IMG/VR virus record: IMGVR_UViG_3300032334_002567
Location: 1-64,000 of that record
Direction: 5' to 3' (one strand)
Length of the DNA stretch: 64,000 nt
Program-made: the position numbers and the translations under genes
Part shown: in pieces, positions 15,107-56,633 of the stretch
Layout: each line of letters begins with the position of its first letter
Position numbering within the stretch: the first letter of the stretch is position 1
The notes under the pieces: model-generated
Databases searched by the model: none
What the model was told of the DNA's origin: nothing
The model's input: the letters and a program-made list of their open reading frames with translations, nothing else

Positions 15107-15140
15107 AATGTTTTCCTTGTTTGAATTACCTATATATAGT

Positions 15141-16013
15141 ATGAATCAGAATATACTTTATGTACCGAGACCAACAAAAGATGAATATGCACAATTATCA
15201 TGTGCTCAAAATTGTGGTAGTTTAGGGCCAACTGACCCTCTGGAGAGAATAGGACCGAGAAGAAAAAGGCAAAAAGTAAGGGAACAAATAAAGGATTATG
15301 TTCTTACCATGCTAGGAGCACCAGTTTTACCACTAGAATTAGACGATCAACAGGTAGAGAACGCAATAGACTTTGCTTTACAGGTTTTTGAAGATTATGC
15401 TCCAATGGAATATTTCCAATATTACACTTTTTACACAACTCCAGGTCAAAGTGTATACAACCTTCCAGCAGACGTAGGGTTTGTAAGAGATATATCATAT
15501 AAGGAAACTGCTAATTACGCATTTTCTGCCTCTGATTTAGGAGGTGTTATACCTTTAGAATATATGGGTGCCGGTGCTTATGGCTCAGTAGCAGGTGGTA
15601 TTAATCCACAACAACCAGTTTGGGGCAAAATGTCTGACTGGGTTATGTATAAGCAGTACGAAGATATGTACAACAGAATATCTGGGCAACAAGGTGGCTG
15701 GGAGTGGTTAGCGGGCTACAACACAATTAAATTGTATCCAGTACCATATAGAACATACCCTGTGGCTGTAAGATACTTACAAAGAAGACCTGATTTTGGG
15801 ATGGTCACACAGGCTATGCAAGAAGGAGCATTGGCTTTCGCAAAAATAATACTAGGTAGAATTAGAAGTAGGATACAAAATCCTCCGGGTCCAAATGGAG
15901 GAATTCAATTAGACGGCCAGCAAATACTACAAGAAGGCCTTGATGAAAAGAAACAGTGGCAAGAAGATTTAATTACTAGATACGGTGATATACTTGGCCC
16001 AAGAATGATGTAA
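15141..16013 (+). CDS. Neck/head-completion protein, T4 gp13-like
   Basis: IKDYVLTMLGAPVLPLELDDQQVENAIDFALQVF and C-terminal PNGGIQLDGQQILQEG. Confidence 0.88.
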   Translation: MNQNILYVPRPTKDEYAQLSCAQNCGSLGPTDPLERIGPRRKRQKVREQIKDYVLTMLGAPVLPLELDDQQVENAIDFALQVFEDYAPMEYFQYYTFYTTPGQSVYNLPADVGFVRDISYKETANYAFSASDLGGVIPLEYMGAGAYGSVAGGINPQQPVWGKMSDWVMYKQYEDMYNRISGQQGGWEWLAGYNTIKLYPVPYRTYPVAVRYLQRRPDFGMVTQAMQEGALAFAKIILGRIRSRIQNPPGPNGGIQLDGQQILQEGLDEKKQWQEDLITRYGDILGPRMM

Positions 16014-16070
16014 TTTAAAACTGTGTTTCGAGACATAAATAAAAAGGCCTACTAAAACGGAAATCTAAAC

Positions 16071-16535
16071 ATGAAAAGCTTTGAAGAGTGGAAACAAATA
16101 AACGAATCTGTTGAAGTATCTAGATACTCTGTAGAGGTCAACTTCAGAACTAACTTGGAAGAAGCTCTAGAAGGTTTCGCCAAAATTACTTTAGGCTACG
16201 TGAGTGCCGCTTTAAAGAAGCATGGATATCATACAAAGCATGTTTTCACAGAAAAGCCCCTAAGGTTATTAGTTTCTTCTAGAAACTGGGATGATGGAGA
16301 ATGGGTTGGTGCTGTTACTTATAACCCACAGTCACATTGCTTTTATCTAAGCAAAGGCTTCTACAACAAAAATCGTAGAAGCATATCAATAGAAAATTCT
16401 CAAAAGTGCGAAGGTAAATCAGCGGCAGAAATAACCAAAGAATTACATAACATGATGCATTCTTTAAAAGACGAACCAAACAAGCATGTAGAAAAATTAA
16501 AACCTGTACCACTAAAAAGAGGTCCCAAAAAATAA
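16071..16535 (+). CDS. Hypothetical protein with capsid-targeting-like N-terminus
   Basis: MKSFEEWKQINES; CATAAATA upstream. Confidence 0.65.
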   Translation: MKSFEEWKQINESVEVSRYSVEVNFRTNLEEALEGFAKITLGYVSAALKKHGYHTKHVFTEKPLRLLVSSRNWDDGEWVGAVTYNPQSHCFYLSKGFYNKNRRSISIENSQKCEGKSAAEITKELHNMMHSLKDEPNKHVEKLKPVPLKRGPKK

Positions 16536-16536
16536 A

Positions 16537-16764
16537 TTATTTTTGGTTCCATTCTTCATAGTTTCTAGCTTTTCTATTTTCGTAACCAAGTTTGTGTCCA
16601 TCGAAAAAAGCTTGTTTTACAAAACCTAAAAAAGCTTTATCGATACATTCTCCTCTTAGACTAAATTCTCCGTATGGTTCACCCATCCATTCTTTGAATG
16701 CTTCTTCTATTTTTTCGTAGTCTTCATTTAAGTCCAAATTTTTTTCTCCTTTTTTTCTTGCCAT
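16537..16764 (-). CDS. Hypothetical protein
   Basis: 75-aa ORF filling the gap between genes. Confidence 0.5.
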   Translation of the reverse strand: MARKKGEKNLDLNEDYEKIEEAFKEWMGEPYGEFSLRGECIDKAFLGFVKQAFFDGHKLGYENRKARNYEEWNQK

Positions 16765-17339
16765 CTAACATTATACAAAATATGGTCTGTCCAGTTGATC
16801 TCTCCACCCTTTTTTTCTATATTAACTAATAAGTCGAAATCTTCATATTGCCCATTATCAAACTTTATATCATTATTTTTTAAGAAATTAATATTCACAG
16901 CAAAGCTTATTCCTACATAAGATGACTTTACTTTTTTTTCAATTGGTAGCACAAAAGAGTTATCTTTGTTGTAAGTCATTCTAAACATATGAACTACTGA
17001 TTTAGAGCTACGTATTTCTTCATATAAAGTTTTAATATATGCATCTTTGAATGTATCATCATCGTCTAAAAAGCAAACCCAGTCTGTTTTTGCCATCTCA
17101 ATAAGATTATTACGAACTTTGCCAGCTTGTCCATGTTGTCCGTCAATTCCCAATTTATCTGGAAAGAAGATATATTCTATTCTTGGATCTTTTGGTAAAG
17201 GAAATTGTATTTTTTCAATAGAGTTAATTCCATCAAAACCAACCAAACATTTCCAATAAAGGTTTGACTGATTAATTAAAGATTTAAGACTATGGAGTAA
17301 TGTAGAGCGACCAATACTTGGAATTATTACTGTTACCAT
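16728..17339 (-). CDS. Glycosyltransferase family 2
   Basis: VTVIIPSIGR, LVGFDG, RNNLI, WVCFLDDDD, EDFD. Confidence 0.85.
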   Translation of the reverse strand: MVTVIIPSIGRSTLLHSLKSLINQSNLYWKCLVGFDGINSIEKIQFPLPKDPRIEYIFFPDKLGIDGQHGQAGKVRNNLIEMAKTDWVCFLDDDDTFKDAYIKTLYEEIRSSKSVVHMFRMTYNKDNSFVLPIEKKVKSSYVGISFAVNINFLKNNDIKFDNGQYEDFDLLVNIEKKGGEINWTDHILYNVRWQEKKEKKIWT

Positions 17340-17388
17340 TTGATTTATCCAGTTATGCCAAATATAATATAGATAGGTGAAATAAAAA

Positions 17389-18129
17389 ATGACAAAATCA
17401 ATAGTTTTAATGGGTGGAACTGGGAGTCGAATGGCCCCGGCCACCAGCTTTGTTAACAAGCACCTACTGCCCGTCTACTCTGGGCAAGGTGCCGTTCCGA
17501 TGCTTTACTATCCGATTGACACCCTAATCAAAACTGGGTCAAAAGAGATATTAGTTATTTCTTCCCGTGAGCACTGCGGCAGGATAATTGAGCACCTAGG
17601 GGATGGCTCACAGTGGGGAGCAGACTTTACCTATAAGATACAGGACACAACCAGAGTCCCTATGGGTATAGCTAGTGCCTTAAAATTGGCAGAAGATTTT
17701 ACCCGTGACGAACCATTCTTAGTAATTTTGGGAGACAACTTCTTTGAAGACTCATTTGCGAATGAATTAGAAAAAATATCTAAATCAAAAGTTAAAGCTG
17801 GCATATTCTTGAAAGAAGTAGAAGATCCAAAAAGATTTGGAGTATACGCAGATGGGGAAATACAAGAGAAGCCTAAGCGGCCAAAAAGTAATTTGGCAGT
17901 AACGGGCCTTTATTGGTACACGCCGCACGTATACGAAGTAGCTAACAAACTACAAGTTTCTGCTAGAGGAGAGCTAGAAATATCAGATATAAACCAACAT
18001 TACTGTAGGAACAAAGAAGTGAGTGTCGATTATATAAAAGGCTTTTGGAGCGATATGGGCACCCCTTTTAGCCTACAAAAAACACAAGAATTCATTCAAA
18101 AAAAGAATTACAGATTAAAACCTATTTAG
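17389..18129 (+). CDS. rmlA: Glucose-1-phosphate thymidylyltransferase (short RmlA type)
   Basis: GGTGSRMAPAT, NKHLLPVY, LGDN, EKP, AVTGLY, SARGELEISD, WSDMGT. Confidence 0.9.
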   Translation: MTKSIVLMGGTGSRMAPATSFVNKHLLPVYSGQGAVPMLYYPIDTLIKTGSKEILVISSREHCGRIIEHLGDGSQWGADFTYKIQDTTRVPMGIASALKLAEDFTRDEPFLVILGDNFFEDSFANELEKISKSKVKAGIFLKEVEDPKRFGVYADGEIQEKPKRPKSNLAVTGLYWYTPHVYEVANKLQVSARGELEISDINQHYCRNKEVSVDYIKGFWSDMGTPFSLQKTQEFIQKKNYRLKPI

Positions 18130-19342
18130 GCTCATTGAAGTTCTCTTCGGCTTTTTGAACCGCATACCAGTCTCTCTGATATGAACCGTCAAGAAGCCCG
18201 TCGCCTCCAGCTAAATAGCTACGAACTATTCTCGGGTCAGTGGCACCAAGTTTAGCTGCCAAGTCTACGGCTGGCTTAATCCAGTCATGGTTTCCACCCT
18301 TCTCCAAAATTTCTTTTTCCAAAATTTGGTAAAGGATATCTTGTGTAGGACGAGGATAGTAAATTTGCGTTACACAACGGCTTGACAAGGCACCGGCTTC
18401 TGAGCCATCTGATCCCATCATTTTGTCAAACAAAACCTTATTGTTAACAGTACAAATAAACAATATTTTCAAAGACCTAAGCTGGTTAACTCTAAAGTTA
18501 ACCTTTCTAATTTCACCACGATCATCTAAGGCTCCCAACCAAATTTTTAAAGCCTCTGGCTCTGCTTTCTCAGCTTCTTCCATAAAAACCAATGGAGGGA
18601 TCTCTGAGAGGTCAGAAAAGAAGAGTTTCTCTAAACCAGCCTTTGTTGTACTAGTTGCGTCAAGCTTTAAGACCGCATCCTTGCCGAACATTTGTTCAAG
18701 GCTGAACATGGTTGTGGTTTTCCCACATCCAGCGTGTCCAAAAAGAACAGCATGGTTTCTGCTGTCGCCATTTGTTTCATGTGCCCTTTTTATATTTCGA
18801 AGAATGAGTCGTATCTGGGGGTTCACGCCATAGAGGTGCTTCCAAGCAGGATGATTGCTAATATGATCATCGCTCTTGTCGCCTAAAAGCTCTTGGGGAA
18901 CCTTCAAATCACTCCAAGTTTTAACTTTGCCTAAAGGCTGAACTTCTCTGACGTTGTTAGCCATTTTTTCATTTTGTAAAACTTGTTGCAGAACTTGGTC
19001 GGGGACTTCGCTGCTGCCTTTGCTAGAATCCTCAACTACCACCCAAGGACTTTCACCAAATTTACTTGCAGACCCAGACTGCTGAATCATGGCTCTGATA
19101 TCTTGCCATTGTTTAAATTCAGCTTCGCCACCAACCTGTCCTGCTTCTTTTTTAAGGGTGATCTCGTAACGATAAACCCATTGACCATTTCTTTCAAATG
19201 GCTCTACAGTGGGAGCGTCTGCGGCCCATGTTTTACCACGGGCACCGGCAATCCCACGGGAAATAATATACTCAATTTGAGAAATTATCTTCGAATTACT
19301 TGGTCTTTTAGATAATGTGCGTTCTAAAACCAATTTATACAT
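18122..19342 (-). CDS. AAA+ ATPase with N-terminal extension (RuvB-like lid)
   Basis: GHAGCGKTT, LVFMEEAEK, CTVN, ALSSRC, TDPR. Confidence 0.8.
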   Translation of the reverse strand: MYKLVLERTLSKRPSNSKIISQIEYIISRGIAGARGKTWAADAPTVEPFERNGQWVYRYEITLKKEAGQVGGEAEFKQWQDIRAMIQQSGSASKFGESPWVVVEDSSKGSSEVPDQVLQQVLQNEKMANNVREVQPLGKVKTWSDLKVPQELLGDKSDDHISNHPAWKHLYGVNPQIRLILRNIKRAHETNGDSRNHAVLFGHAGCGKTTTMFSLEQMFGKDAVLKLDATSTTKAGLEKLFFSDLSEIPPLVFMEEAEKAEPEALKIWLGALDDRGEIRKVNFRVNQLRSLKILFICTVNNKVLFDKMMGSDGSEAGALSSRCVTQIYYPRPTQDILYQILEKEILEKGGNHDWIKPAVDLAAKLGATDPRIVRSYLAGGDGLLDGSYQRDWYAVQKAEENFNEPK

Positions 19343-19385
19343 TGTCTTTTGCGTCCTTGTGTATAATTAGCAGGAAACAAAGACA

Positions 19386-19413
19386 AGTATAGCAGAAAAA
19401 TTTGGCTTGTAAA
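19386..19413 (-). promoter_or_regulatory. Early sigma70-like promoter
   Basis: TTTACA-16 nt (ending TGC)-TATACT; same architecture as 51966-51993. Confidence 0.6.
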
Positions 19414-19436
19414 CCAACCCAAATTTTAACTTTAAA

Positions 19437-19922: not shown

Positions 19923-19991
19923 TTTATTTTCTTTTGGGGTTAAAGCGTATAATTATTATAGTACGAAACAAATAAAAGAGAAAGGGTAAAA

Positions 19992-20324: not shown

Positions 20325-20325
20325 C

Positions 20326-20532: not shown

Positions 20533-20597
20533 AATTTCCTTACTTTAAGTGTACTAGTACTAGTTTATTATATGTATGTTCTAACTTGAAATTTTAA

Positions 20598-21784: not shown

Positions 21785-21838
21785 TATATCTCCTTTACAA
21801 TACCATAGTATATTTCATTTTTTTTTGATATATACAAT

Positions 21839-22003
21839 ATGGGAGAAAACAAAAAAAATGCAGTGGTAAAAAAAGGATGCGGCTGCGGCGGCAAGGCATT
21901 TAAGGCTTCTGAATTTTCTGTACAAGAGCACAAAAAGCAAGAATTATTAAATAGACTGAAAAAAAACAACATATATAAATCAAGAAACAAAATGTTTATG
22001 TGA
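21839..22003 (+). CDS. Small basic GCGC-motif protein (54 aa, below the ORF-track cut-off)
   Basis: MGENKKNAVVKKGCGCGGKAFK...; TATATA 4 nt upstream of ATG. Confidence 0.55.
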   Translation: MGENKKNAVVKKGCGCGGKAFKASEFSVQEHKKQELLNRLKKNNIYKSRNKMFM

Positions 22004-28591: not shown

Positions 28592-28635
28592 GTTTAGTTG
28601 AATCAATAATTTTAGACAAGGGCAATACATAAAAT

Positions 28636-28920
28636 ATGTACGGATTTTATAAATTCATTCAAAATAACCCTTTGGATAGAGAGATTATTGGATTATATTA
28701 TCATAATCCTCATATGAATTTATCAGAAATTTCAAAAAAAACAAATGTATCAATAGGAGAGATTTATCGAATATTACATGCAAATGAAATTAATCCTAAT
28801 AGATTAAAAAATAATCATCAAAAAGTTCACAATCTATCTAACTTAGGATGGGGGATTAGCGAAATAGCAAGCTTTACCGGCTACACTCCAAGAAATATAA
28901 GATACATACTTAAGAAATAA
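28636..28920 (+). CDS. Tandem HTH DNA-binding protein
   Basis: [20 protein letters not shown] and [20 protein letters not shown]. Confidence 0.75.
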
Positions 28921-28922
28921 AA

Positions 28923-30686
28923 ATGACACCAATAGAATTATCTCCTACAGATACACCAACTCCAACACCAACGGATACTCCACCTACAGATACTCCTACT
29001 CCTACTCCTACTCCTACTCCAACACCAACGGATACTCCACCTACAGATACACCAACCCCAACACCAATTCCACCTACAGATACTCCTACTCCAACACCAA
29101 TTCCACCTACAGATACACCAACTCCAACACCAATTCCACCTACAGATACTCCAACTCCAACACCAATTCCACCAACAGATACTCCTACTCCAACTCCAAC
29201 GCCAATTCCACCAACAGATACTCCTACTCCAACTCCAACACCAATTCCACCAACAGATACTCCTACTCCAACACCAATCCCACCAACAGATACTCCTACT
29301 CCAACACCTACCAATACACCTACCAATACACCCACCAATACACCTACCAATACACCTACCAATACACCCACCAATACACCTACCAATACACCCACCAATA
29401 CACCTACCAATACACCTACCAATACACCTACCCCTACTCCAACTCCTGCTCCTCAATTAATTAAATCAGGAGAAATTGTTCTTCTACTTTCTGGTTCGGG
29501 TGTTACCAGTCCAGGTCAGTCTTTGGGTGGAGAACCTTCTAATACTTTTGTGTCTCAGAGACTTTTTTCAGATATATCTGCTGATCAGGCACAAGAAGGC
29601 AAGACAGACTACAGATGCATATACGTTAGCAATGCAAGTAACGAAGGAACTCTTTATGGTGCAAAAGTTTATATACTTTACAAAGAAACAAGTGACGTAA
29701 CAGTAAATTTGGGATTCGTGGCTAGAAATGAAGTTCAACAGATAATAATATCAAAAGTAAAATCCATATGCAGTGGTACTTTTAAAATAATATACACAGA
29801 CACTTATTTAGGAAATATACGACAACAAGTTACATCAGAAATAGATCTATTCACAGAAGCCGGTGAAGCAAAAAGCATTGAAGAGATATCTTCTTCTATA
29901 AAAGAAAAACTCTCAGAACTAAATGGTTTAGAAACTGTTAATTCTATTGATTCAATATCAGTAGGTGGAAGCCAAGATGTAGGCGAAGAACAAAACGTTG
30001 TAAACGAAAATAGTCAAACAAATTCGGGAAGTTCAAGTATTTCAGAATTCACTCTCAGACATTCCCCTATAACTAGTAATTCTATATCAGGAACAATATA
30101 CTTAAATAGCAACCCAATACAAACATTCGTAATGCAGGAATCCGGAACAAGCGGTGAATGTGGAATAAACTATAATTTAATCTTTACAAGTATAGGTTCT
30201 CAAGCAATAAAAGCAACTAGTGGAACAATAAATCTAACAAGTGGAAATTTGACTTTAAATTGGAACAATAGTTCTCCTGGTGTTAACTACGTACGGACTA
30301 ATTACACCTATAAAAACACTACCTTTACTTTTAATATAACTTTTCAAGGACAAGTAGGAAATCGTTTTAATGATGAATTGGCTGTTAGTGATGTTAATCT
30401 TGATTCAATAGAAAGTCCTACAATTCAAACATATAGATTGTTTTCAGGAGGACCTGTTAATACAGAAGCAGATATCATAGACGTAGAAACAACTACGCCA
30501 AATGGTGTAGAATTTTGTAGAAATACAAGTTGCTCAAGTGAAGGGTACGATAACGCTTTTTATCTAGGAGATCTACATCCTTTAGATGTAGCTCCTATTT
30601 GGATAGAAAGAATAGCACCAGCAGATTCAAACGCTATTGAAAATGATGGATTTACTTTAAAAATTGACGGCACAACTTCGAGATAG
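28923..30686 (+). CDS. Virion structural protein with an N-terminal mucin-like Pro-Thr tract
   Basis: ~170-aa PT/PTDT/PTNT tract; SLGG...LFSD...DYRCIYVSN and PIWIER tail-protein-like segments. Confidence 0.7.
28944..29453 (+). repeat. Compound coding tandem repeats: [11 protein letters not shown] units, then 10 x 12-bp PTNT units (29307-29426)
   Basis: Directly visible. Confidence 0.95.
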
Positions 30687-32694: not shown

Positions 32695-32719
32695 TATTTA
32701 TACTTTATGTGCATAAATA
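32695..32719. promoter_or_regulatory. Divergent late promoter pair
   Basis: TATAAATA on the minus strand (32695-32702) and CATAAATA on the plus strand (32712-32719). Confidence 0.6.
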
Positions 32720-32724
32720 AATAT

Positions 32725-33600
32725 ATGAATTTTAAAGAGTGGCTAACAATTTTAGAAGCAACAGATTTGGAAACAGCTCCTAGTGAAGCCATCCATATTC
32801 ATAAGACCCATGATGGAGATGGAGGAACCCAATACGTAGCCACCTTTCAAATAAACAAAGGATCAGAAAGAGTAGGGTTTAAAGTAGCTGCAGAATTATT
32901 AGAAGATGAAAAAATTAGAAAAAGAGACCAAAATGGAAAAATCTATTCCATTCCTTTGAAAGGGGTTCTTTCTATAGTTTTTGGCCCCGACAAAGGATAT
33001 GGAGATCCTTCTTATGACGTTTCTAATATTTGGGGGTCTAACGCAAAATATATCTATACAAATGTAATGGTGGCAGTAAATAAAATTATTGATAGTGTGA
33101 CAGAAACTGATGTGGATGGCCTTGTTTTTACAGCCTATGATCAACGAACAGAACCAATATATCATAGGATATATTTAACGCAATTAAAACCAAGGGGCTT
33201 TATAAAAGTAGCTGACGATATGTATGCTAAGAAGGAAGTACTAGAGGCTGGGTTAAAAAAATTCCCTCCGGATGTTCAAGAATTTATAAAAAATGATGTA
33301 GAGTCCGCAGAGAGAAAGACTGTAAACAGATTAGATGCCGTGAGAAGAGAAAAAATAGAATCCAGACAAAAAACAGTACAAGCAGAAAATTTAAAAAGAT
33401 TAATTGGAAAAATAGTTTTATATAAAAATAATCCTAAGTTTGAGGGCACTGTATCTTCTGGATTGCTTTGGTCTGTGGATATGTCGCAGCACTATGCTTT
33501 AATAAAAAATAAAAAATTACCTGCGGGGCGTGAAGAAGATGCTTCATCGTGGTATGGTTCCATACAGGTTCCGGTAATGGATGTTATTGGATTAAGCTAA
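32725..33600 (+). CDS. Hypothetical protein with capsid-targeting-like N-terminus
   Basis: MNFKEWLTILEA. Confidence 0.65.
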   Translation: MNFKEWLTILEATDLETAPSEAIHIHKTHDGDGGTQYVATFQINKGSERVGFKVAAELLEDEKIRKRDQNGKIYSIPLKGVLSIVFGPDKGYGDPSYDVSNIWGSNAKYIYTNVMVAVNKIIDSVTETDVDGLVFTAYDQRTEPIYHRIYLTQLKPRGFIKVADDMYAKKEVLEAGLKKFPPDVQEFIKNDVESAERKTVNRLDAVRREKIESRQKTVQAENLKRLIGKIVLYKNNPKFEGTVSSGLLWSVDMSQHYALIKNKKLPAGREEDASSWYGSIQVPVMDVIGLS

Positions 33601-36609: not shown

Positions 36610-36981
36610 TTATTGATTACGTTGCCTAGTTTGAACATAAAAAACATAAGATTTTTTCAGATTTCCAGCTTCAACCTGACTTGGCGATTGAGTTTCTCTA
36701 TATGAGACGACTAACTTCGTACTTTCTGTTTCATAAGCCAATATACTTTTTAATTTGCCTAAAACCGATGCTACAAATTCTGGTCTTCCTGTAATTCTGA
36801 TGCCGTCTTCGCCGTATGTTGAACCTTTGTGATCATAGCTTATCGGTGCCATTTGTATAGGGGAATCAATCCTTAGAGTTTTCCAAAAGTCAATAATTTG
36901 ATCTTTAGTCGCTCTCCATTCTGATTTTTTTCCCAATTCTTTTTGGGATTCTCTATCACTAATCCAATTTTTAAATTCCAT
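36610..36981 (-). CDS. Hypothetical protein with capsid-targeting-like N-terminus
   Basis: MEFKNWISDRES; CTAAATA 4 nt upstream of ATG. Confidence 0.65.
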   Translation of the reverse strand: MEFKNWISDRESQKELGKKSEWRATKDQIIDFWKTLRIDSPIQMAPISYDHKGSTYGEDGIRITGRPEFVASVLGKLKSILAYETESTKLVVSYRETQSPSQVEAGNLKKSYVFYVQTRQRNQ

Positions 36982-37001
36982 ACGATATTTAGTGTAAAAA
37001 C

Positions 37002-37036
37002 AAAAAAAATATAGAGTGGGTTTCCCCACTCTATAT
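37002..37036 (-). terminator. Intrinsic terminator
   Basis: ATATAGAGTGGG-GAAA-CCCACTCTATAT followed by a T run. Confidence 0.85.
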
Positions 37037-37286
37037 AACTATTCTTATCTTATGTGCATTCAAGGAAGTACGATAAAAACAGTAAAAAGGAACCTTTTGG
37101 AACTTTGCAATTTACTGTGGTTCGTATATATCCTGCCTATTTTTTTAGGTTTTTTCATTTTAAATTCAGCCAAACAACTAAGCTACCACGTTTGGTGGGT
37201 CGCCTCTATGCAATCCATTACATTAGATTGTTGTTTTTCCTCAAGAGTCCTTCTCTTGTTCTTTCAGAGTCTTCATTTCTTTTTCT
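37002..37286 (-). ncRNA. Candidate structured non-coding RNA, family unknown
   Basis: Late-promoter motif CTAAATA (37291-37297) at the 5' end, terminator at the 3' end, no substantial ORF on this strand, several nested stems. Confidence 0.45.
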
Positions 37287-37351
37287 ACTATATTTAGTAA
37301 AATGAAATTTAAATTGAACAAATATTTGGTGAAAAACGACTAAATATGAAT

Positions 37352-37660
37352 ATGATAACTTTTAAAGGGTTTTTAGAATCCAAAGTAATAATAGAAGCAG
37401 ACGCACCACCACCCGCTGGTGGGCCTCCAACGCCTCCCAGTGGTGGACCTGCCGCAGGAGGAGCCGGTGGCATATCTTCGCCTGCTTCATTGCCTGGTGG
37501 GCCTCCAATGCCACCTCCTGCTATGGGTGGAGGTATGGGAGGTGGTCCTGCTATGGGTGGGCCTCCAACAGGAGATGCATCAAGTCAAAATAAATCTATG
37601 AAATTAAAAGCTTATAACGTTTGGGACGTAATAGAAAAATTAATTACCAAAGATAGCTGA
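37352..37660 (+). CDS. Pro/Gly-rich protein with capsid-targeting-like N-terminus
   Basis: MITFKGFLESKVIIEA then PPPAGG repeats; CTAAATA 5 nt upstream. Confidence 0.65.
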   Translation: MITFKGFLESKVIIEADAPPPAGGPPTPPSGGPAAGGAGGISSPASLPGGPPMPPPAMGGGMGGGPAMGGPPTGDASSQNKSMKLKAYNVWDVIEKLITKDS

Positions 37661-44713: not shown

Positions 44714-45757
44714 ATGAAAGTTGAAAGCGAAATAAAGCTAGATTTCAACGATGTGTTAATAAAGCCAAAAAGAAGTAGTCTCGAAAGCAGATCTCAAGTA
44801 GACCTGAATAGAGAATACAAATTTAGAAATTCTTCCATAAAAATTGAGGTTGGTGTGCCTCTCGTAGCAGCCAACATGGATACAATTGCTACGTTTGAAA
44901 TGGCCCGAGCTTTGTCAAAAAGAAACATATGGACAGCCTTACATAAATTTTACTCTATCAATGAGATTGAAAAATTTTTTAAAGAAGAAGCAGACGTAGC
45001 TTCTAAGTGCTTTTATTCTCTAGGAATAAATGAAGATGATTTTGATAAGATAAAAAAACTTCAAGGATTAGGTGTAAAGCTTCCGTTCATTTGTGTTGAC
45101 GTTGCAAACGGCTATAGCCAAAAGTTCGTAAATGAATGTGGTTATTTAAGAAAGCTATTCCCAAATGCAGTAATATTGGCTGGGAACGTATGTACACCAG
45201 AAATGGTACAAGAGCTACTGATTTCGGGCGGAGTGGACATAATTAAAGTAGGGATAGGTGGTGGAAGTGGATGTATCACTAGGCATACAACGGGCATAGG
45301 ATTTCCACAACTTAGTGCCGTAATAGAATGCGGCGATGCTGCTCATGGTCTAGGCGGGCATATCTGCTCTGATGGTGGTTGTAGGGCTCCTGGCGACATA
45401 GCCAAAGCATTTGCTGCTGGTGCTGACTTTGTGATGATGGGAGGCATGTTAGCGGGGCATGATGAATGTGGAGGTGAATTTAAACTAAATGAAAATGGCG
45501 AAAGAAAATCCATGTGTTTTTATGGAATGAGCTCTGAGCTTGCTATGAAAAAATACTATGGAGGCAAAGCTAGCTATAGAGCAAGTGAAGGAAGAGTAAT
45601 AGAAGTCCCCTATAAAGGCCATGTAGATCAGACTATAGAACAAATATTGGGTGGGTTAAGAAGCACTTGCACTTATGTTGGTACAGATAAATTAAAAGAC
45701 TTATCAAAGTGCACTACATTTATAAGAGTGAATAGAGTACACGATAATATGAATTAA
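44714..45757 (+). CDS. guaC: GMP reductase
   Basis: KLDFNDVLIKPKRS, AANMD, DVANGY, KVGIGGGSGCITR, SDGG, FYGMSS, YRASEG, GGLRSTCTYVG. Confidence 0.93.
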   Translation: MKVESEIKLDFNDVLIKPKRSSLESRSQVDLNREYKFRNSSIKIEVGVPLVAANMDTIATFEMARALSKRNIWTALHKFYSINEIEKFFKEEADVASKCFYSLGINEDDFDKIKKLQGLGVKLPFICVDVANGYSQKFVNECGYLRKLFPNAVILAGNVCTPEMVQELLISGGVDIIKVGIGGGSGCITRHTTGIGFPQLSAVIECGDAAHGLGGHICSDGGCRAPGDIAKAFAAGADFVMMGGMLAGHDECGGEFKLNENGERKSMCFYGMSSELAMKKYYGGKASYRASEGRVIEVPYKGHVDQTIEQILGGLRSTCTYVGTDKLKDLSKCTTFIRVNRVHDNMN

Positions 45758-50820: not shown

Positions 50821-50823
50821 AAT

Positions 50824-50867: not shown

Positions 50868-50889
50868 AGTTGGAATTTAGCCTAAGAGG

Positions 50890-51918: not shown

Positions 51919-51965
51919 GGATTAGCTCCTTTGTTAGGGTTGTTTTGGTTATTGATCTGTCAGCT

Positions 51966-51993
51966 ATGTTAGCACGACTTATTCGGTTGTAAA
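51966..51993 (-). promoter_or_regulatory. Early sigma70-like promoter
   Basis: TTTACA-16 nt (ending TGC)-TAACAT. Confidence 0.6.
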
Positions 51994-52090
51994 GGGGGCC
52001 ACAATCAACTTCTTCTATTTCAAAATTAGCACAAAAGACACTAAATAAAGTGGCGAGTTAAGGATAACTTTTGCTTTTACAAGGAGGTAA

Positions 52091-52759
52091 ATGATTTGGC
52101 ACTCCCCCAAAATTTTAATTTGTTTGCCTACATTTCACTCAGAAATAGCATGGCTTGAACGATCTACAGAATCAGTTTCAAAGCAAACTTACGCAAACTT
52201 TGATTGCTATCTAGTCAAAGATTCTTGTACCAAGGCAGGCACTCCATGCCTTGAGTGCGACAACTGCAGGGCGACTGTGTCTTTTTGCCAGAAGCTTGCA
52301 CAAAAGGATAAAAGATTCAAGTTTTTTAATTTGCCTCTTAATTGTGCAGGTGCAGGTTGGGGGCCGAGAAATTTTGCTATACAAAATACTAAGCATGATT
52401 TAATAGCCTACCTAGATGATGATAATTGGTATGAGCCAAATCATCTAGAACTGTTGCTAGAAGCTTTAAAATCTAAAGATTCAGATATGGCATACACAGG
52501 CACTAGGTTAATTAAAAAAGATGGAACAATAGAAGGCATAAGAATTCATCCGTATGAGCCAAAGCAAGGGTACATAGATACATCTGAAATACTACACAAG
52601 AGGTTTTTAATAGAAAAATATGGAGGGTGGAGATGGGTAAAAAAAGGAAATGATTGGGATATAGTCTCTAGGTGGGTTCCGGGGTTAAAATGGAGCCACA
52701 CAAATCAAATCACCTTAAATTTTTACCTTCGTGAAGGATGTGGAATACACAGAACTTAA
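52091..52759 (+). CDS. Glycosyltransferase family 2
   Basis: LPTF, SVSKQTY, PRNFAI, IAYLDDDN, IDTS, NDW; AAGGAGG SD; CTAAATA upstream. Confidence 0.88.
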   Translation: MIWHSPKILICLPTFHSEIAWLERSTESVSKQTYANFDCYLVKDSCTKAGTPCLECDNCRATVSFCQKLAQKDKRFKFFNLPLNCAGAGWGPRNFAIQNTKHDLIAYLDDDNWYEPNHLELLLEALKSKDSDMAYTGTRLIKKDGTIEGIRIHPYEPKQGYIDTSEILHKRFLIEKYGGWRWVKKGNDWDIVSRWVPGLKWSHTNQITLNFYLREGCGIHRT

Positions 52760-53166
52760 AAGAACTTCCAGAATTTTGATTTTTCTTTTGGTTTTTGCTC
52801 TGGCTCTTCTTTTATTTTTTGAGCTAACATTTTTTGCTTTTCTTTTTTTCTTGCATTGTGTATGGCTCTTTTCACAAGTAGTTTGGCTGCGATTGGAATA
52901 AAAGGTAGATTCCTTTTATCCGACTCTTCTTTGAGCCAATCAACCACTCTATCAATGTTTTGTTCTGTCCATTCGCTTCCATTTTGATCCATTATTGCAG
53001 CTCTTTCGTTACATTTACAACTTGGAGTAGGAACTATGCCTACTTTTGCTAAAAGAGCTTTTAGTTCAGTGCCGGGACCTTCAGGGTTTTCTAGATAATT
53101 TTGTAGATTTTCTATGTATCTGGTTCTTAGATTTTGTACGTCTTCTATGTTGAAAGATTTACGCAT
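52756..53166 (-). CDS. Conserved-looking phage protein with a CxC motif
   Basis: GPGTELKALL..VGI...CKCNERA..MD..G..W...N...VDWLKEE...R.LPF. Confidence 0.65.
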   Translation of the reverse strand: MRKSFNIEDVQNLRTRYIENLQNYLENPEGPGTELKALLAKVGIVPTPSCKCNERAAIMDQNGSEWTEQNIDRVVDWLKEESDKRNLPFIPIAAKLLVKRAIHNARKKEKQKMLAQKIKEEPEQKPKEKSKFWKFF

Positions 53167-53739
53167 TTAATTTGCCTCTTTACGTAATCTAAAATTATTT
53201 CTACTAATCATAGCACGAGTTTGATGTGCAAAAGAAACTATATCTGCCCTGTGTTCGGTGATTGTTTCTTTAGCAGGCAAACCAGAATCTAATTTATCCA
53301 AGCAAACTACTAAAGGTATTCTAGCAACCGGACCAAAGTGAAAACATCCATCTTTTAGTATCGCTCCACATTGCTTTGCTGCTTCCCAAGCATCTTCTTT
53401 GCTAACATTTGGAAACTCAACAAAGCTATTCTCTAAATTTTCTATTGTTATTCTTTCTGGTTCTTGACTTGGAGGCTCAAACAAAGAGTCAAGCGGAGTA
53501 GTATAGGTGCAACAATCCTCAGCATTAATATCACAACAATCAAAACACTCTGTGTAGCATCGTCTATCACAAAAACAGCCGTCGTCTTGTGGTGATCCAG
53601 TTGGAACACAAAGAGGTCCTGGACCACCGAGGGCACAAGTCCAGTTAGGATTTTGATCGTCTGGTGGGTAACAGCAACCTTCTGCTTTTGCCAACATTAC
53701 AAATAAAATATCGTCTTCTTCTTGTTTTTCTTGGCTCAT
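53167..53739 (-). CDS. Cys-rich protein with somatomedin-B-like spacing in the N-terminal half
   Basis: GCC...C...C...CFCDRRC...CFDCC....DCC. Confidence 0.6.
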   Translation of the reverse strand: MSQEKQEEDDILFVMLAKAEGCCYPPDDQNPNWTCALGGPGPLCVPTGSPQDDGCFCDRRCYTECFDCCDINAEDCCTYTTPLDSLFEPPSQEPERITIENLENSFVEFPNVSKEDAWEAAKQCGAILKDGCFHFGPVARIPLVVCLDKLDSGLPAKETITEHRADIVSFAHQTRAMISRNNFRLRKEAN

Positions 53740-54950
53740 TCTTCCACCTTAAAAGTAAAATCAATGTCTAAAAACTTATCACTTATTCTTTTTTTGTCTT
53801 CTTCGCTTATTTCTTTGCTAGAAATGATTAAAATACTTTCTACTTGACATCTAACTTGTTTTATACCTATTATATTTAAACTTAGTAATTCTTGTTTAAT
53901 TTTATTTATAGATTCACCTTTAATTGTAAAAGGTCTACTATCTAAAAATTCAAATTGACGATAAAGCCTTCCGCAATCACAACGAGAATATTCTTGCTCT
54001 ATTTTACAATAATCTCCATTCCAATATCTTATAAAAGGACTTGGTAACGAAAAATAATCAGTGCTAAGTAATTTTTTGTCTTTTTCTTCGCACCAACTTA
54101 AATTATCTAATAGATGTTGTCTTCTTTCTTTACAAGTGATAAATGTAGATCCGCCATCCCAGCAACGCATATGGTCACAAAATTTATCTATAAAACCAGA
54201 TTCCAATAAAAAGCTTACATCTTTTTTGAGTATTTTTTCATTTGTATTGCTTAAAAGTGTACAAATTTTACCCTTAAAATTAAACTTTTTAATATAGTGA
54301 CACAAAGAGTTTATAGTAGAACCGGGACCTAACAAAACATCTATTTTATTTTCAGATAAAAATTTCAGCAAATCACGATAAAAAACATCTGGTTGATATT
54401 TGAGTAATTCTAAACTAGCACAATGCGATGTGGATTGATACTTTTCGCCATGCTTCTCCATAAAATTAGGGGGGTTTTTAAAAGTCTCCACGGCATTGTT
54501 AGACACTACCCTATTCTTAAAAAGATAAAGAACATGTGGATTAAAAATATTAAATTCGTCTAAAATCAAATCATAATGATTTTCACATTCTATGAATTTT
54601 AAGAATGGATCCCACCTAAGATACTCAAATCCAACGCCGGTTGTGCTTCCACTACTACGCATTATTTGAGATTCAGATGATAACTCACTAACATACCAAT
54701 CCTTTTTATTCAACAAATCGTCTTTTGAAAAATAAAATTGATTTTTATCTCTATAAACCTTGCTGTTTTTAAAAGCCCAAAGCTCAATATTTTTCTTTAA
54801 AACATTAACAACATCTAAAAGAACTTCTTGATCTTCATAAAGCAAGCCAGAACAAAAACTTTTGTAATCGTACAATACTTGTTTATTAGGTAAGTTATTT
54901 TTCCATTTAACTAGAAATTCTTTAGTTTTTTTATAACCTAGTTTTAGCAT
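53736..54950 (-). CDS. PaaK/CapK-like adenylate-forming (ANL) ligase
   Basis: RSSGSTTG P-loop, CWDGG, LLSTD, PFIRYWNGD, CDCGR. Confidence 0.8.
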   Translation of the reverse strand: MLKLGYKKTKEFLVKWKNNLPNKQVLYDYKSFCSGLLYEDQEVLLDVVNVLKKNIELWAFKNSKVYRDKNQFYFSKDDLLNKKDWYVSELSSESQIMRSSGSTTGVGFEYLRWDPFLKFIECENHYDLILDEFNIFNPHVLYLFKNRVVSNNAVETFKNPPNFMEKHGEKYQSTSHCASLELLKYQPDVFYRDLLKFLSENKIDVLLGPGSTINSLCHYIKKFNFKGKICTLLSNTNEKILKKDVSFLLESGFIDKFCDHMRCWDGGSTFITCKERRQHLLDNLSWCEEKDKKLLSTDYFSLPSPFIRYWNGDYCKIEQEYSRCDCGRLYRQFEFLDSRPFTIKGESINKIKQELLSLNIIGIKQVRCQVESILIISSKEISEEDKKRISDKFLDIDFTFKVEE

Positions 54951-54952
54951 AG

Positions 54953-55513
54953 CTATAACATAAAATCTGGTGTTTTTGGAGTAATGTATTTTAGGAACTC
55001 CACAGTTCCATTATTTGTAAAAACTACCTCATATCGACCTCTACATTGATGAGTGCTGCATTCGCAGTCCAAAGATCTAAAGTACTCTGCAATTGTTTCG
55101 CTTCCAGTTTTCCCAAATTTTTGTGTTCTAAGATAACATTTTCTTTTGCTTCTTCTGCCTGAGTCTAAAAACCAAACCATCCAAGACTCATCTGTCAAAA
55201 CCTCTAAAGTTTCCCGAGCTATTATCTTCGATGAGTCTTTATAAAAAATGTTATGTATGTCATTAAAGATAGGATATGCTACACTATAAACTCTATAAGT
55301 ATTTTTATCTTTTTTTATAGTATTCTTATCTATCTTAAAAAAATTACTTAACATATCAACTTTATAAGACAGCCAGTCTTTATTTTTATCTCGCATGGCC
55401 AAGTAGCAGTTCTTACCTTTGGATGGTCTTATAATAGAAGAACCTCCCAAGATAGTACCATAAAGCACTTGCTTTTGTTTTTCTGTAAATTTTGGACCAA
55501 TTTGGTAAGTCAT
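54953..55513 (-). CDS. Free-standing double-motif LAGLIDADG protein with catalytic acidic residues altered
   Basis: VLYGTILGGS and WMVWFLDSG in place of GxLLGDG and WFMDDG. Confidence 0.75.
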   Translation of the reverse strand: MTYQIGPKFTEKQKQVLYGTILGGSSIIRPSKGKNCYLAMRDKNKDWLSYKVDMLSNFFKIDKNTIKKDKNTYRVYSVAYPIFNDIHNIFYKDSSKIIARETLEVLTDESWMVWFLDSGRRSKRKCYLRTQKFGKTGSETIAEYFRSLDCECSTHQCRGRYEVVFTNNGTVEFLKYITPKTPDFML

Positions 55514-55516
55514 AAA

Positions 55517-56056
55517 TTAATCTTTGTCTTTAAAAAATTGCATATTTTTATCTGCCCATTCTATAACCATGTGCGTTCCTCTGGACAACAGTCCTACCAA
55601 TTGGGTGGGGTTTCCAGAACCCTCTATTGATATGTTTTCTCTTTCATTATTCTCGATCCAAACCAAAGAAAATATTAAACTTTTTCTTTTCTTAAGTTCT
55701 TCTACCATTTGGTGAATAGTAACTAGAGATAAATCTGGGATGCCTAGTTCTTGATATTTTTTCTTTAGTTTTTCTTCTTGGGACTCAATTATTAGCAATA
55801 AATTATCAGAAAGAGCTTTTAAACCAGCTTCTAAATTTGCTCCACTAAAAAATATTTTACATAAGTTTGAATCAACTTTGGTTAATTTGGCTTCGAAACT
55901 TGTCGTTTCATTAGCATTTTTTACCATGTATTCTATTTCTTCTTGCACTCCCCTAGACAGTATTTCATAAAAAACAAAGAAAGGTCCGTCTTTTGTTTCT
56001 ACTAATTTAACCCCGTCTATTCTTTTAAAAATATTTATAAAATCTTCAAAATTCAT
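55517..56056 (-). CDS. Hypothetical protein
   Basis: 179-aa ORF. Confidence 0.6.
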   Translation of the reverse strand: MNFEDFINIFKRIDGVKLVETKDGPFFVFYEILSRGVQEEIEYMVKNANETTSFEAKLTKVDSNLCKIFFSGANLEAGLKALSDNLLLIIESQEEKLKKKYQELGIPDLSLVTIHQMVEELKKRKSLIFSLVWIENNERENISIEGSGNPTQLVGLLSRGTHMVIEWADKNMQFFKDKD

Positions 56057-56063
56057 TTAATTC

Positions 56064-56579
56064 CTATCTAATCATTGATTTTGGAAGAACCCTATAGAGT
56101 TTGATAATATGCTTACAAAGCATAGGATCATTGTTTGGATTCACAGAAGGTCTATTACCAGTGGGTGTGTATGAAGACCTTTTTCTTCCAAACAAGGATT
56201 TGTCTAGGTGGTCGGCATAATTGCCTCGCCAATAAAAATCCTTACAATTGCAGCGAACTAAAACATGACTATTTGGATCAATTTTATTAAATTCATAGCT
56301 TTTACCATTATTTGCAACTATTTTAACATTAAGTCCCGCACCATATTTGACATTTTTAAACAATATAGAAGGCATATATTCTTTGCCATTTTCTGTATTT
56401 TGAGCCAAACCTTTCAGGTATAGAGTTTTTAATCCTAAATAAGGGACCCAGTGTAGTTTTGATATCTTTATTGGGTCTATTGCGTATTGTCTTCTAGTGG
56501 CCTTAGGAAAAGCCTTCACGGTACTTGTGTACAAGTCGTTTAAACTGCTCTCTGCTATAAACCATTGTTCGAAATTCAT
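56064..56579 (-). CDS. SWIM-type zinc-finger protein with capsid-targeting-like N-terminus
   Basis: MNFEQWFIAES; VRCNCKDF...LCKH. Confidence 0.75.
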   Translation of the reverse strand: MNFEQWFIAESSLNDLYTSTVKAFPKATRRQYAIDPIKISKLHWVPYLGLKTLYLKGLAQNTENGKEYMPSILFKNVKYGAGLNVKIVANNGKSYEFNKIDPNSHVLVRCNCKDFYWRGNYADHLDKSLFGRKRSSYTPTGNRPSVNPNNDPMLCKHIIKLYRVLPKSMIR

Positions 56580-56633
56580 ACTATATTTATTATCATAATG
56601 TTCAAAACTTAACTATAATAAATCGGAGGAATA

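What the first reader, a model, noticed from the sequence alone, without database searches (positions are those of the whole stretch)
15125..56595. Late genes look leaderless: TAnATA box only 4-5 nt before ATG
Seen: CTATATA-TAGT-ATG (15141, neck), TATATA-CAAT-ATG (21839), TACATA-AAAT-ATG (28636), CATAAATA-AATAT-ATG (32725), CTAAATA-TCGT-ATG (36981), CTAAATA-TGAAT-ATG (37352) and TAAATA-TAGT-ATG (56579), none with an evident SD. Known: T4 gp55 promoters (TATAAATA) initiate about 6 nt downstream, so +1 would fall at or near the AUG. Leaderless and AUU initiation are both antagonised by IF3. Inference: this phage may lower IF3 fidelity or exploit 70S initiation as a translation-takeover strategy. 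This is my top candidate for an undescribed system.
Basis: partly seen in the sequence, partly recalled or inferred. Interest (0 to 1): 0.8.

Follow-up and report, generated by a model that had tools for sequence, protein, structure and literature searches.

The report
Promoter boxes fused to start codons
In this huge freshwater phage and its relatives, a promoter box like those of T4 late genes sits 4-5 bases before the start codon of a class of virion genes that have no ribosome-binding site, so their mRNAs very probably begin at the AUG. The layout is real and conserved, but no RNA ends have been mapped, and leaderless phage late genes are already a known kind of thing.

Summary
All seven sites exist as written. 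They lack Shine-Dalgarno pairing: median dG +0.4 against -5.2 kcal/mol for the other 69 genes. All have T at -1. The box-to-ATG spacing is enriched: 7 of 87 candidate starts against 0.78% of all ATGs, P=6e-6.

It is not a quirk of this window.
- In a 595-kb relative, LR756511, an unbiased hexamer-by-distance scan puts TAAATA at 4-5 nt just behind the SD hexamers. That is 43 of 945 gene starts, P=8e-35.
- Twenty-two orthologues of the neck gene keep only the box. It lies either 2-7 nt from the ATG without SD, or 31-41 nt away with SD.
- T4 itself never places TATAAATA closer than 13 nt.
- Relatives encode a gp55-like late sigma.
- Most box-ATG genes encode proteins with a T4-like capsid-targeting N-terminus, or virion parts.

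Best reading: a gp55-type, -10-only late promoter is fused to the AUG and gives leaderless mRNAs for about 5-9% of genes.

No 5' ends could be mapped. The IF3 idea is untested. Phage phiYS40 and the Deinococcus-Thermus bacteria are precedents, so this is a new variant of a known kind.

The parts
15131..15138 (.). Palindromic TATATATA box in the 34-nt divergent spacer between the 929-aa gene (start 15106, minus) and the neck gene. It is 2-4 nt before ATG 15141 on the plus strand and 24 nt before ATG 15106 on the minus strand, whose leader carries AAGGAA.
   Evidence: the box is conserved in 22 non-redundant orthologous loci while the flanks are diverged
15141..16013 (+). Neck / head-tail adaptor gene (T4 gp13-like). 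Predicted to be leaderless.
   Evidence: PHROG 211 'head-tail adaptor Ad2', E 8e-16, the same product name that the T4 record gives gp13. Orthologue alignments start at this Met. SD dG +0.4.
21829..22003 (+). TATATA box (21829-21834), spacer CAAT, then a 54-codon ORF from ATG 21839. It lies in a 54-nt divergent spacer. This is the weakest of the seven: a short ORF with no homology tested.
28626..28920 (+). TACATA box (28626-28631), spacer AAAT, then a 94-codon ORF from ATG 28636. The N-terminus [10 protein letters not shown] is CTS-like.
   Evidence: weak SD-like match (dG -4.0) 13 nt upstream
32714..33600 (+). TAAATA box (32714-32719), spacer AATAT, then ATG 32725. The 291-aa protein begins MNFKEWLTILE (CTS-like).
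   Evidence: only its own contig was found in IMG/VR
36610..36991 (-). TAAATA box (36991-36986), spacer TCGT, then ATG 36981. The 123-aa protein begins MEFKNWISDRE (CTS-like).
37001..37036 (-). Intrinsic-terminator-like hairpin (12-bp stem, then U8) ending about 19 nt upstream of ATG 36981. Only the TAAATA box fits between it and the start codon.
   Evidence: dG -19.2 kcal/mol, z -4.95
37341..37660 (+). TAAATA box (37341-37346), spacer TGAAT, then ATG 37352. The 102-aa protein begins MITFKGFLES (CTS-like).
56064..56589 (-). TAAATA box (56589-56584), spacer TAGT, then ATG 56579. The 171-aa protein begins MNFEQWFIAE (T4 ipII/ipIII begin MKTYQEFIAE).
   Evidence: two orthologues at 66% identity keep TAAATA-TATC-ATG
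8230..8235 (.). Example of the same box used with a leader. TATATA lies 40 nt before ATG 8276, which has the SD AAGGAGG, and 18 nt before ATG 8211 on the minus strand.
   Evidence: The other leadered examples are TATATA boxes: 23122 (40 nt to 23168), 59603 (40 nt to 59649), 4137-4132 minus (39 nt to 4092), 46916 (21 nt to 46943), 32347-32342 minus (22 nt to 32319). 28590-28583 minus is a full TATAAATA octamer 23 nt before 28560.

Best explanation
The box (A/C)TA(A/T)ATA is the -10-type, -35-less promoter element of this phage lineage's late transcription. It is the counterpart of T4's TATAAATA and is most likely read by host RNA polymerase core carrying a phage gp55-like sigma.

In most transcription units the box lies about 17-41 nt before the ATG, and the leader carries a Shine-Dalgarno sequence. 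In a specific class of genes the box lies 4-5 nt (range 2-8) before the ATG. Initiation about 5-6 nt downstream of the box then falls on the A of the AUG, after a pyrimidine at -1. This class includes the neck/adaptor gene, several virion parts and above all many small proteins with a T4-like capsid-targeting N-terminus.

These mRNAs would be leaderless and would have to be translated through recognition of the 5'-terminal AUG (the 70S/IF2-favoured route), not through SD pairing.

Shown here: the layout, its statistical excess, its conservation, the lack of SD, the gene class, and the presence of the sigma in relatives.
Inferred: the transcription start point, which sigma reads the box, late timing, and the mode of translation.
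For: (1) Window: 7 of 87 candidate starts against 0.78% of all ATGs, P=6e-6. SD dG is +0.4 against -5.2 kcal/mol, T at -1 in 7 of 7, and ATG in 7 of 7.

(2) Independent complete genome LR756511 (TerL 49% identical). In an annotation-light hexamer-by-distance scan, TAAATA at 4 nt (13 genes) and 5 nt (12 genes) is the strongest non-SD signal. There are 43 box-ATG starts among 945, against 0.31% of all ATGs, P=8e-35; 62% of all such sites in the genome are gene starts. SD dG is -1.5 against -5.8 (P=2e-11). Pyrimidine at -1 occurs in 40 of 43 against 425 of 902 (P=5e-10). No -35 conservation is seen. The signal is orientation-specific: the reverse complement TATTTA shows no peak.

(3) Neck gene orthologues at 69-88% amino-acid identity have unalignable upstream DNA except for the box. 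Thirteen have it 2-7 nt from the ATG with SD dG +0.4. Nine have it 31-41 nt away with SD dG -4.0. None lies between (P=1e-4). LR756511's neck orthologue has TAAATA-ACTAC-ATG, so TATATA and TAAATA are variants of one element.

(4) Orthologues of the 56579 gene keep TAAATA-N4-ATG.

(5) There is no room for any other promoter. The divergent spacer at the neck gene is 34 nt. A strong terminator ends about 19 nt before ATG 36981.

(6) Geometry matches T4: the box occupies -13 to -6 and there is no -35 element (PMC2988020).

(7) gp55-like sigma: the LR756511 protein hits PHROG 234 'late sigma' (the family of T4 gp55) at E 2.9e-7 and Pfam Sigma70_r2 at 31 bits, above the cutoff. Orthologues lie on at least 9 contigs that also carry the neck orthologue, and on a second contig from the window's own metagenome.

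(8) Gene class: CTS-like N-termini in 5 of 7 window genes and 27 of 43 LR756511 genes. T4 ipII/ipIII begin MKTYQEFIAE. Of the larger non-CTS box genes with any PHROG hit, 4 of 5 are virion, tail or baseplate proteins.

(9) Class specificity: 446 kb around the sigma gene in 72 relatives almost lacks the layout.
Against: No 5' end was mapped; no RNA run holding this sequence was listed.

No sigma was found in the window or on its 381-kb contig, so its presence in this genome is inferred from relatives.

The consensus is not T4's octamer. With a fixed T4 geometry, a 4-nt spacer would put +1 on the U of the AUG, so some flexibility in start-site choice must be assumed.

TATATA is palindromic. In divergent spacers it may primarily serve the opposite gene.

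Many box-ATG genes are paralogues sharing an N-terminal motif, so the counts are not independent events.

Gene calls were made with a crude home-made caller. Terminator enrichment upstream of box genes was not significant (3 of 50 against 16 of 895, P=0.07).
Confidence: 0.66

Rival explanations
1. The layout is the same and the mRNAs are leaderless, but the box is read by the host's primary sigma as a -10 element, as in the leaderless genes of Deinococcus-Thermus or actinobacteria. On this reading the phage simply follows a host habit and no phage late sigma is involved.
For: The layout of a -10 motif 6-7 bp before the ORF is validated as a host-sigma promoter in Deinococcus (PMC12340547). The host is unknown. 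No sigma was found on the window's contig.
Against: The box ends in ATA, not in the T that is near-invariant in TANNNT. The spacing is 4-5 nt, not 6-7. There is no TG extension and no -35 element. The box resembles T4's late octamer, and relatives encode a gp55-family sigma. The genes are virion genes. Nearly half of the relative's genes have strong SD sequences, so the host is not SD-poor.
Confidence: 0.15
2. The genes are translated from longer transcripts that start upstream. The A/T box next to the AUG is a translation signal (an unstructured A/U-rich, S1-type or other SD-independent enhancer), or merely the promoter of the neighbouring divergent gene.
For: TATATA is palindromic, and several sites lie in divergent spacers (15131, 21829). 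A/U-rich upstream regions are known to favour initiation. No TSS data exist.
Against: The commonest form, TAAATA, is not palindromic and is orientation-specific. The same box lies 17-41 nt upstream of SD-led genes, too far from the AUG to act as a translation signal. The same gene toggles between near-box-without-SD and far-box-with-SD. A pyrimidine at -1 followed by A at +1 is a transcription-start signature. A terminator stands directly upstream of the box at 36981.
Confidence: 0.12
3. Chance matches in A/T-rich intergenic DNA combined with a free choice among alternative start codons.
For: The genome is 35% G+C. Three of the seven ATGs are not the first in their ORF.
Against: The strict first-ATG test is still significant (P=0.002-0.006). 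The result replicates at P=8e-35 in another genome. The box is conserved in orthologues whose flanks have diverged. T4 and the sigma-gene neighbourhoods serve as negative controls.
Confidence: 0.02

Closest known systems
T4 late promoters (TATAAATA, gp55/gp33/gp45)
   Same: An A/T-only box of the -10 type with no -35 element. The box ends about 5 nt before +1. Transcription runs in both polarities. It drives virion genes. A small, region-2-only sigma of the gp55 PHROG family is encoded by relatives.
   Different: The consensus is a 6-7-mer, (A/C)TA(A/T)ATA, not the octamer. In 88 kb of T4, including the late region, TATAAATA lies 13-28 nt before the ATG and never closer, always with an SD leader. 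Here a whole class has the box 4-5 nt from the ATG with no SD. gp33 was not looked for, and gp45 was not found by a single-sequence search.
Leaderless genes with a -10 motif adjacent to the ORF (Deinococcus-Thermus; also actinobacteria)
   Same: A -10-like motif a few bp before the start codon, no SD, and a two-class genome of RBS-type and -10-type upstreams (PMC12340547).
   Different: There the motif is TANNNT at 6-7 bp, read by the host RpoD, and covers about a third of host genes. Here it is a phage box ending in ATA at 4-5 bp, covers 5-9% of genes, and is tied to virion and CTS proteins.
Thermus phage phiYS40 middle/late transcription
   Same: A large myovirus reported to make leaderless middle and late mRNAs, with a proposed shift in initiation factors (IF2 up, IF3 down) favouring them (review PMC3594737).
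   Different: In phiYS40 most middle and late transcripts are said to be leaderless, in a host where leaderless mRNAs are common. Here only a minority class is, alongside many strong SD genes. The primary paper could not be read.
Lambda cI mRNA from PRM
   Same: A phage mRNA that starts at the AUG and is translated without a leader (PMC10491246 abstract).
   Different: That is a single regulatory gene expressed in lysogens from a sigma-70 promoter, not a late structural class.
T4 internal proteins with a capsid targeting sequence
   Same: The N-termini of the box-ATG proteins (for example MNFEQWFIAE and, in the relative, MKTFKEF...) match T4 ipII/ipIII MKTYQEFIAE and ipI MKTFKEF. The CTS is a 10-residue targeting and cleavage signal (PMC9026906).
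   Different: T4 has a handful, all with SD leaders. LR756511 has about 38-67 candidates, and most are in the box-ATG class. Packaging and cleavage were not tested.

Membership tests
T4-type late transcription (gp55 system) | The promoter is a single A/T box at the -10 position with no conserved -35 element | tested here: met
   Logos of 43 LR756511 sites and 22 neck orthologues show nothing conserved upstream of the box.
T4-type late transcription (gp55 system) | Box sequence TATAAATA | tested here: not met
   The consensus is (A/C)TA(A/T)ATA. The full octamer precedes only 2 window starts and is not the form found at 4-5 nt.
T4-type late transcription (gp55 system) | The phage encodes a gp55-family sigma | tested here: inconclusive
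   Met in LR756511 (PHROG 234 at E 2.9e-7; Sigma70_r2 at 31 bits) and in at least 9 contigs that also carry the neck orthologue. Not found in the window or on its contig. A candidate lies on another contig of the same metagenome.
T4-type late transcription (gp55 system) | gp33 co-activator and gp45 sliding-clamp activator | tested here: inconclusive
   phmmer with T4 gp45 found nothing in LR756511 or the window, but a single-sequence search is insensitive. gp33 was not searched for.
T4-type late transcription (gp55 system) | Transcription starts about 6 nt downstream of the box, late in infection | not testable with these tools
   No RNA run was listed.
Leaderless mRNA genes | A promoter -10 element within a few nt of the start codon | tested here: met
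   The box is 4-5 nt from the ATG (range 2-8).
Leaderless mRNA genes | No Shine-Dalgarno sequence | tested here: met
   dG +0.4 against -5.2 kcal/mol in the window; -1.5 against -5.8 in LR756511.
Leaderless mRNA genes | AUG as the start codon at the 5' end | tested here: met
   All seven are ATG, each preceded by T. That the AUG is the 5' terminus is inferred.
Leaderless mRNA genes | Mapped primary 5' end at the start codon | not testable with these tools
   No RNA run was listed.
phiYS40-type translational takeover (IF2 up, IF3 down) | Most middle and late transcripts are leaderless | tested here: not met
   Only 7 of 76 window genes and 43 of 945 LR756511 genes have the layout (78 with spacings of 4-8 nt).
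phiYS40-type translational takeover (IF2 up, IF3 down) | Changed levels or fidelity of initiation factors during infection | not testable with these tools
   The only fact gathered is that LR756511 encodes an IF3 homologue. None is in the window.
T4 capsid-targeting-sequence (CTS) internal proteins | An N-terminal motif of about 10 residues resembling MKTYQEFIAE and ending in Glu | tested here: met
   The strict motif is found at 38 of 945 N-termini against 12 of 3100 internal Met.
T4 capsid-targeting-sequence (CTS) internal proteins | Cleavage by a gp21-type prohead protease and packaging in the head | not tested
   The protease was not searched for. Proteomics is needed.

The most novel reading that the evidence does not exclude
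A widespread lineage of T4-related huge freshwater phages has fused its gp55-type late promoter to the start codon of dozens of genes, chiefly capsid-targeted cargo proteins. These genes would then form a separate, SD-independent translational regulon. Its output could be set by initiation-factor balance, including the phage's own IF3 in some members, and its members switch between leaderless and SD-led forms over evolutionary time.
Probability: 0.2. Interest if true: 0.8.

Novelty: new variant of a known kind. Interest (0 to 1): 0.6.

Why it matters
If 5' ends confirm it, this would be a family-wide case in which a T4-type late promoter and the start codon form one module. That would give a defined set of leaderless mRNAs in phages whose other genes use strong SD sequences.

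It would make three things directly testable:
- how far gp55-type polymerases can be pushed toward the coding start;
- whether leaderless translation is used to time or dose virion cargo proteins;
- whether the initiation factors carried by huge phages (IF3, IF1) relate to that class.

In practice the box-ATG rule corrects start-codon calls (15141, 32725, 37352). Together with the N-terminal motif, it flags dozens of likely capsid-packaged proteins in unannotated huge-phage genomes.

Tried and rejected
- **Nucleotide similarity.** Megablast of 22 kb against GenBank phages gave no match.
- **Bacteroidota host.** I first suspected an SD-less Bacteroidota host as the trivial explanation. This is rejected: many window genes carry AGGAG-type SD sequences, and 47% of LR756511 genes have dG of -6 kcal/mol or lower.
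- **Multisubunit-RNAP jumbo phages.** PhiKZ/AR9-type late promoters were considered. Their reported UTRs are 26-491 nt (AR9), no leaderless transcripts were detected among the mapped phiKZ TSSs, and the motifs differ. No such polymerase was seen.
- **RNA evidence.** No RNA run was listed.
- **Sigma search.** phmmer with T4 gp55 alone was not significant (E 0.48). The candidate was confirmed only by PHROG and Pfam profiles.
- **Sigma on the window's contig.** Not found among the 80 best of 261 relatives.
- **IF3 in the window's lineage.** An IMG/VR scan with the LR756511 IF3 gave only distant hits on other contigs. This method needs exact 8-mers, so the result is inconclusive.
- **Host inference.** The best cellular matches to the glutamate dehydrogenase are 45-49% identical and spread over several phyla, so this is uninformative.
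- **Terminators.** Enrichment upstream of box genes in LR756511 was 3 of 50 against 16 of 895, P=0.07, not significant with a strict finder.
- **Rfam.** No family was found in the window.
- **phiYS40 primary paper.** PMC1885378 is not held.
- **Literature.** A search combining leaderless, gp55, T4-like and late promoter found no prior description in the held library. The library is limited, so this is weak evidence of novelty.

Full report
**What the window is.** The 64 kb are the first 64 kb of IMG/VR contig IMGVR_UViG_3300032334_002567, which is 381,443 bp long, and window coordinates equal contig coordinates. G+C is 35.4%. DNA runs holding it are lake and freshwater metagenomes. There is no nucleotide match among GenBank phages. 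The large terminase is 49% identical to that of LR756511.1, a 595-kb uncultured huge phage, and about 30% identical to T4-like terminases. I called 76 genes with a simple codon-usage caller. They change strand very often and leave tiny divergent spacers. Recognisable functions include TerL, a baseplate-like protein, a gp13-type neck/adaptor (PHROG 211), primase, SbcCD, a class II ribonucleotide reductase, methylases and others.

**Checking the observation.** All seven strings are present exactly as written. Many other genes in the window have clear Shine-Dalgarno sequences, for example at 8276, 21784, 31912, 32319, 34647, 41825, 52091 and 56634. The host therefore uses SD, and an SD-less host is not the explanation. 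The seven genes stand out in several ways.
- Their median anti-SD duplex energy is +0.4 kcal/mol, against -5.2 for the other 69 genes (P=3e-4).
- All have T at -1, against 29 of 69 with a pyrimidine there.
- All start with ATG.

TA[ACT]ATA at 4-5 nt precedes 0.78% of all 2051 ATGs but 7 of 87 candidate start ATGs (P=6e-6). With a strict first-ATG rule it precedes 4 of 76 starts (Fisher P=0.002; local-shuffle P=0.0055). The other ATGs with such a box open only short ORFs inside or antisense to the called genes or between them. TATATA is 9.9-fold enriched in intergenic DNA. In the window no box lies 7-13 nt from a start. Other boxes lie 14-44 nt upstream of SD-led genes, four of them at 39-40 nt.

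**Comparative evidence for the neck gene.** IMG/VR holds 39 loci with orthologues of the neck gene at 69-88% identity. In 22 non-redundant loci the upstream DNA is unalignable except for a TATATA box. Thirteen have the box 2-7 nt before the ATG (mode 5) with no SD (median dG +0.4). Nine have it 31-41 nt upstream with an SD-like leader (median dG -4.0). None falls between (P=1e-4). One gene has therefore switched between two layouts while keeping the box. A promoter would behave this way; a translation signal would not. In the window the box is palindromic and sits in a 34-nt spacer. On the other strand it lies 24 nt before the 929-aa gene, whose leader contains AAGGAA. Two orthologues of the 56579 gene at 66% identity keep TAAATA-TATC-ATG. 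Other genes in these loci show the same layout.

**Replication in a whole genome.** I fetched all of LR756511 and called 998 genes crudely. I then tabulated every hexamer at every distance before the first ATG of 945 genes. After the SD hexamers (AAGGAG at 6 nt, n=24), the strongest signal is TAAATA at 4 nt (13) and 5 nt (12), which is 25 of its 75 occurrences within 60 nt. TATATA peaks at 5 nt. Across all TA[ACT]ATA the histogram reads 22, 26, 11, 10 and 9 at 4-8 nt, on a baseline of about 3.
- 43 of 945 starts have the box at 4-5 nt, against 0.31% of all 21,970 ATGs (P=8e-35).
- 62% of all such sites in the genome are gene starts.
- The excess holds without the paralogous family described below (16 of 878, P=4e-8).
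- These genes lack SD (dG -1.5 against -5.8, P=2e-11).
- They have C or T at -1 in 40 of 43 cases, against 425 of 902 (P=5e-10).
- They show no conserved -35 element, only A or C just before the box.
- The signal is strand-specific, because TATTTA shows no peak.
- LR756511's own neck orthologue has TAAATA-ACTAC-ATG, so TATATA and TAAATA are variants of one element.

**Controls.** In 88 kb of T4, including the late region, TATAAATA lies 13-28 nt before first ATGs and never closer. The T4 ip, e, 4 and 53 genes all have SD leaders. In 446 kb around the sigma gene of 72 non-redundant relatives the box-ATG layout is almost absent. It is therefore specific to a gene class and is not a compositional effect.

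**Which genes carry the layout.** Five of the seven window proteins and 27 of the 43 in LR756511 begin with M-x(1-3)-F-x-x-(W/F)...E. Examples are MNFEQWFIAE, MNFKEWLTILE and, in the relative, MKTFKEF and MKTFNQWLE. T4 ipII and ipIII begin MKTYQEFIAE and ipI begins MKTFKEF, as read from the T4 record. This is the 10-residue capsid targeting sequence, which is removed by the prohead protease (PMC9026906; PMC10229621). The strict motif marks 38 of 945 N-termini against 12 of 3100 internal Met. Among the larger non-CTS box genes of LR756511 that had any PHROG hit, 4 of 5 are virion, tail or baseplate proteins. The class therefore consists of virion genes, and I presume they are expressed late. 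It is not all virion genes, since TerL and others have leaders.

**Which polymerase.** T4 late promoters are an 8-bp TATA box at -13 to -6 with no -35 element, read by gp55 (PMC2988020). With that geometry a 5-nt spacer puts +1 on the A of the ATG, and a 4-nt spacer needs one nucleotide of flexibility. LR756511 encodes a 186-aa protein that matches PHROG 234 'late sigma transcription factor', which is T4 gp55's family, at E 2.9e-7. It also matches Pfam Sigma70_r2 at 31 bits, above the cutoff. It has 266 relatives in IMG/VR. Nine or more of the contigs also carry the neck orthologue, including the closest relatives of the window's phage. One is a second contig of the window's own metagenome. 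The window's contig itself is not among them. In the two contigs whose coordinates I compared, the sigma gene lies 13 and 50 kb upstream of the neck gene. In this contig that would place it off the 5' end. Its presence in this genome is therefore inferred.

**Room for a leader.** At 36981 a 12-bp hairpin followed by U8 (dG -19.2 kcal/mol, z -4.95) ends about 19 nt before the ATG, and only the TAAATA box lies between them. Three similar cases exist in LR756511, but the overall enrichment was not significant.

**The IF3 idea.** No IF3, sigma or obvious translation factor was found in the window, either among 20 small proteins scanned with Pfam or by phmmer with E. coli IF3 over all six frames. 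LR756511 does encode a full-length IF3 homologue (E 2.6e-39) with an SD-led ATG. That huge phages carry IF1 and IF3 is already reported (PMC7162821). A scan for it in the window's lineage was inconclusive. Established knowledge from E. coli is that IF3 disfavours leaderless mRNAs and IF2 favours them. Whether a phage IF3 relaxes or enforces this cannot be told from sequence.

**Comparison with what is known.** The layout of a -10 box adjacent to the ORF giving a leaderless mRNA has been experimentally validated in Deinococcus-Thermus, where the motif is TANNNT at 6-7 bp and is read by the host sigma (PMC12340547). Thermus phage phiYS40 is reported to make mostly leaderless middle and late mRNAs, with IF2 raised and IF3 lowered (PMC3594737). 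Lambda cI is the classic single case. What I did not find described (limited library) is this architecture on a T4-type late promoter in T4-related huge phages, restricted to a class of virion and CTS genes, and toggling evolutionarily with SD-led forms.

**Verdict.** The leaderless reading is well supported by comparative and statistical evidence, but no RNA 5' ends support it. The generalisation to all late genes and the IF3 mechanism are not supported. This is a new variant of a known kind, with moderate-to-high interest.

Noticed in passing
window 16071, 20532(-), 23168, 28636, 32725, 36981(-), 37352, 44095, 56056(-), 56579(-): About ten proteins begin with a motif like the T4 capsid targeting sequence (T4 ipII/ipIII MKTYQEFIAE). 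Examples are MKSFEEWKQINE, MKTFIQWAGE and MNFEQWFIAE. LR756511 has 38-67 such proteins of 58-1076 aa. They are probably head-packaged cargo proteins cleaved after the Glu.
   Followed up: partly
window 37001-37295 (minus strand): A possible non-coding transcript of about 280 nt. A CTAAATATAGT box lies near 37294-37284, only a 10-codon ORF follows, and the unit ends in the 12-bp hairpin plus U8 at 37036-37001. There is no Rfam match.
   Followed up: partly
L052:25966-26550 (minus), i.e. LR756511 325966-326550: The 595-kb relative encodes a full-length IF3 homologue (E 2.6e-39 against E. coli IF3) that starts at an SD-led ATG. No counterpart was found in the window.
   Followed up: partly
L055:14260-14817 (LR756511); L132, L143 and about 260 other IMG/VR loci: A 186-aa sigma with region 2 only, belonging to the gp55 PHROG family, is widely conserved in this huge-phage lineage. 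One copy lies on contig 3300032334_002673 from the same metagenome as the window and may belong to the same genome.
   Followed up: partly
L017, L027, L030, L035 (upstream of position 3001): The four SD-led neck-gene orthologues listed share a conserved leader, a T-run followed by AGCAGGGC or AGCAAGG, just before the ATG. It may be a regulatory leader element.
   Followed up: no
window, whole: Gene orientation switches very often for a phage, and divergent spacers are as short as 34 nt (15107-15140) and 54 nt (21785-21838; 56580-56633). Each holds box elements for both directions.
   Followed up: partly
window 28923-30686: A 587-aa protein whose first ~190 residues are Pro-Thr repeats ([13 protein letters not shown] and TNTP units). 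It is preceded by a TACATA box 14 nt from the ATG and has no SD, so it may have a very short leader.
   Followed up: no
window 54953-55513 (minus): A LAGLIDADG homing endonuclease (Pfam PF03161, E 1e-25) sits inside a run of minus-strand genes.
   Followed up: no
window 56872-58206, 59649-60908, 44714-45757: Host-like metabolic genes: a class III aminotransferase (by eye), a glutamate dehydrogenase and a GMP reductase (by eye). The best cellular matches to the dehydrogenase are only 45-49% identical and spread over Latescibacterota, Cyanobacteria and Planctomycetota, so the host stays unknown.
   Followed up: partly
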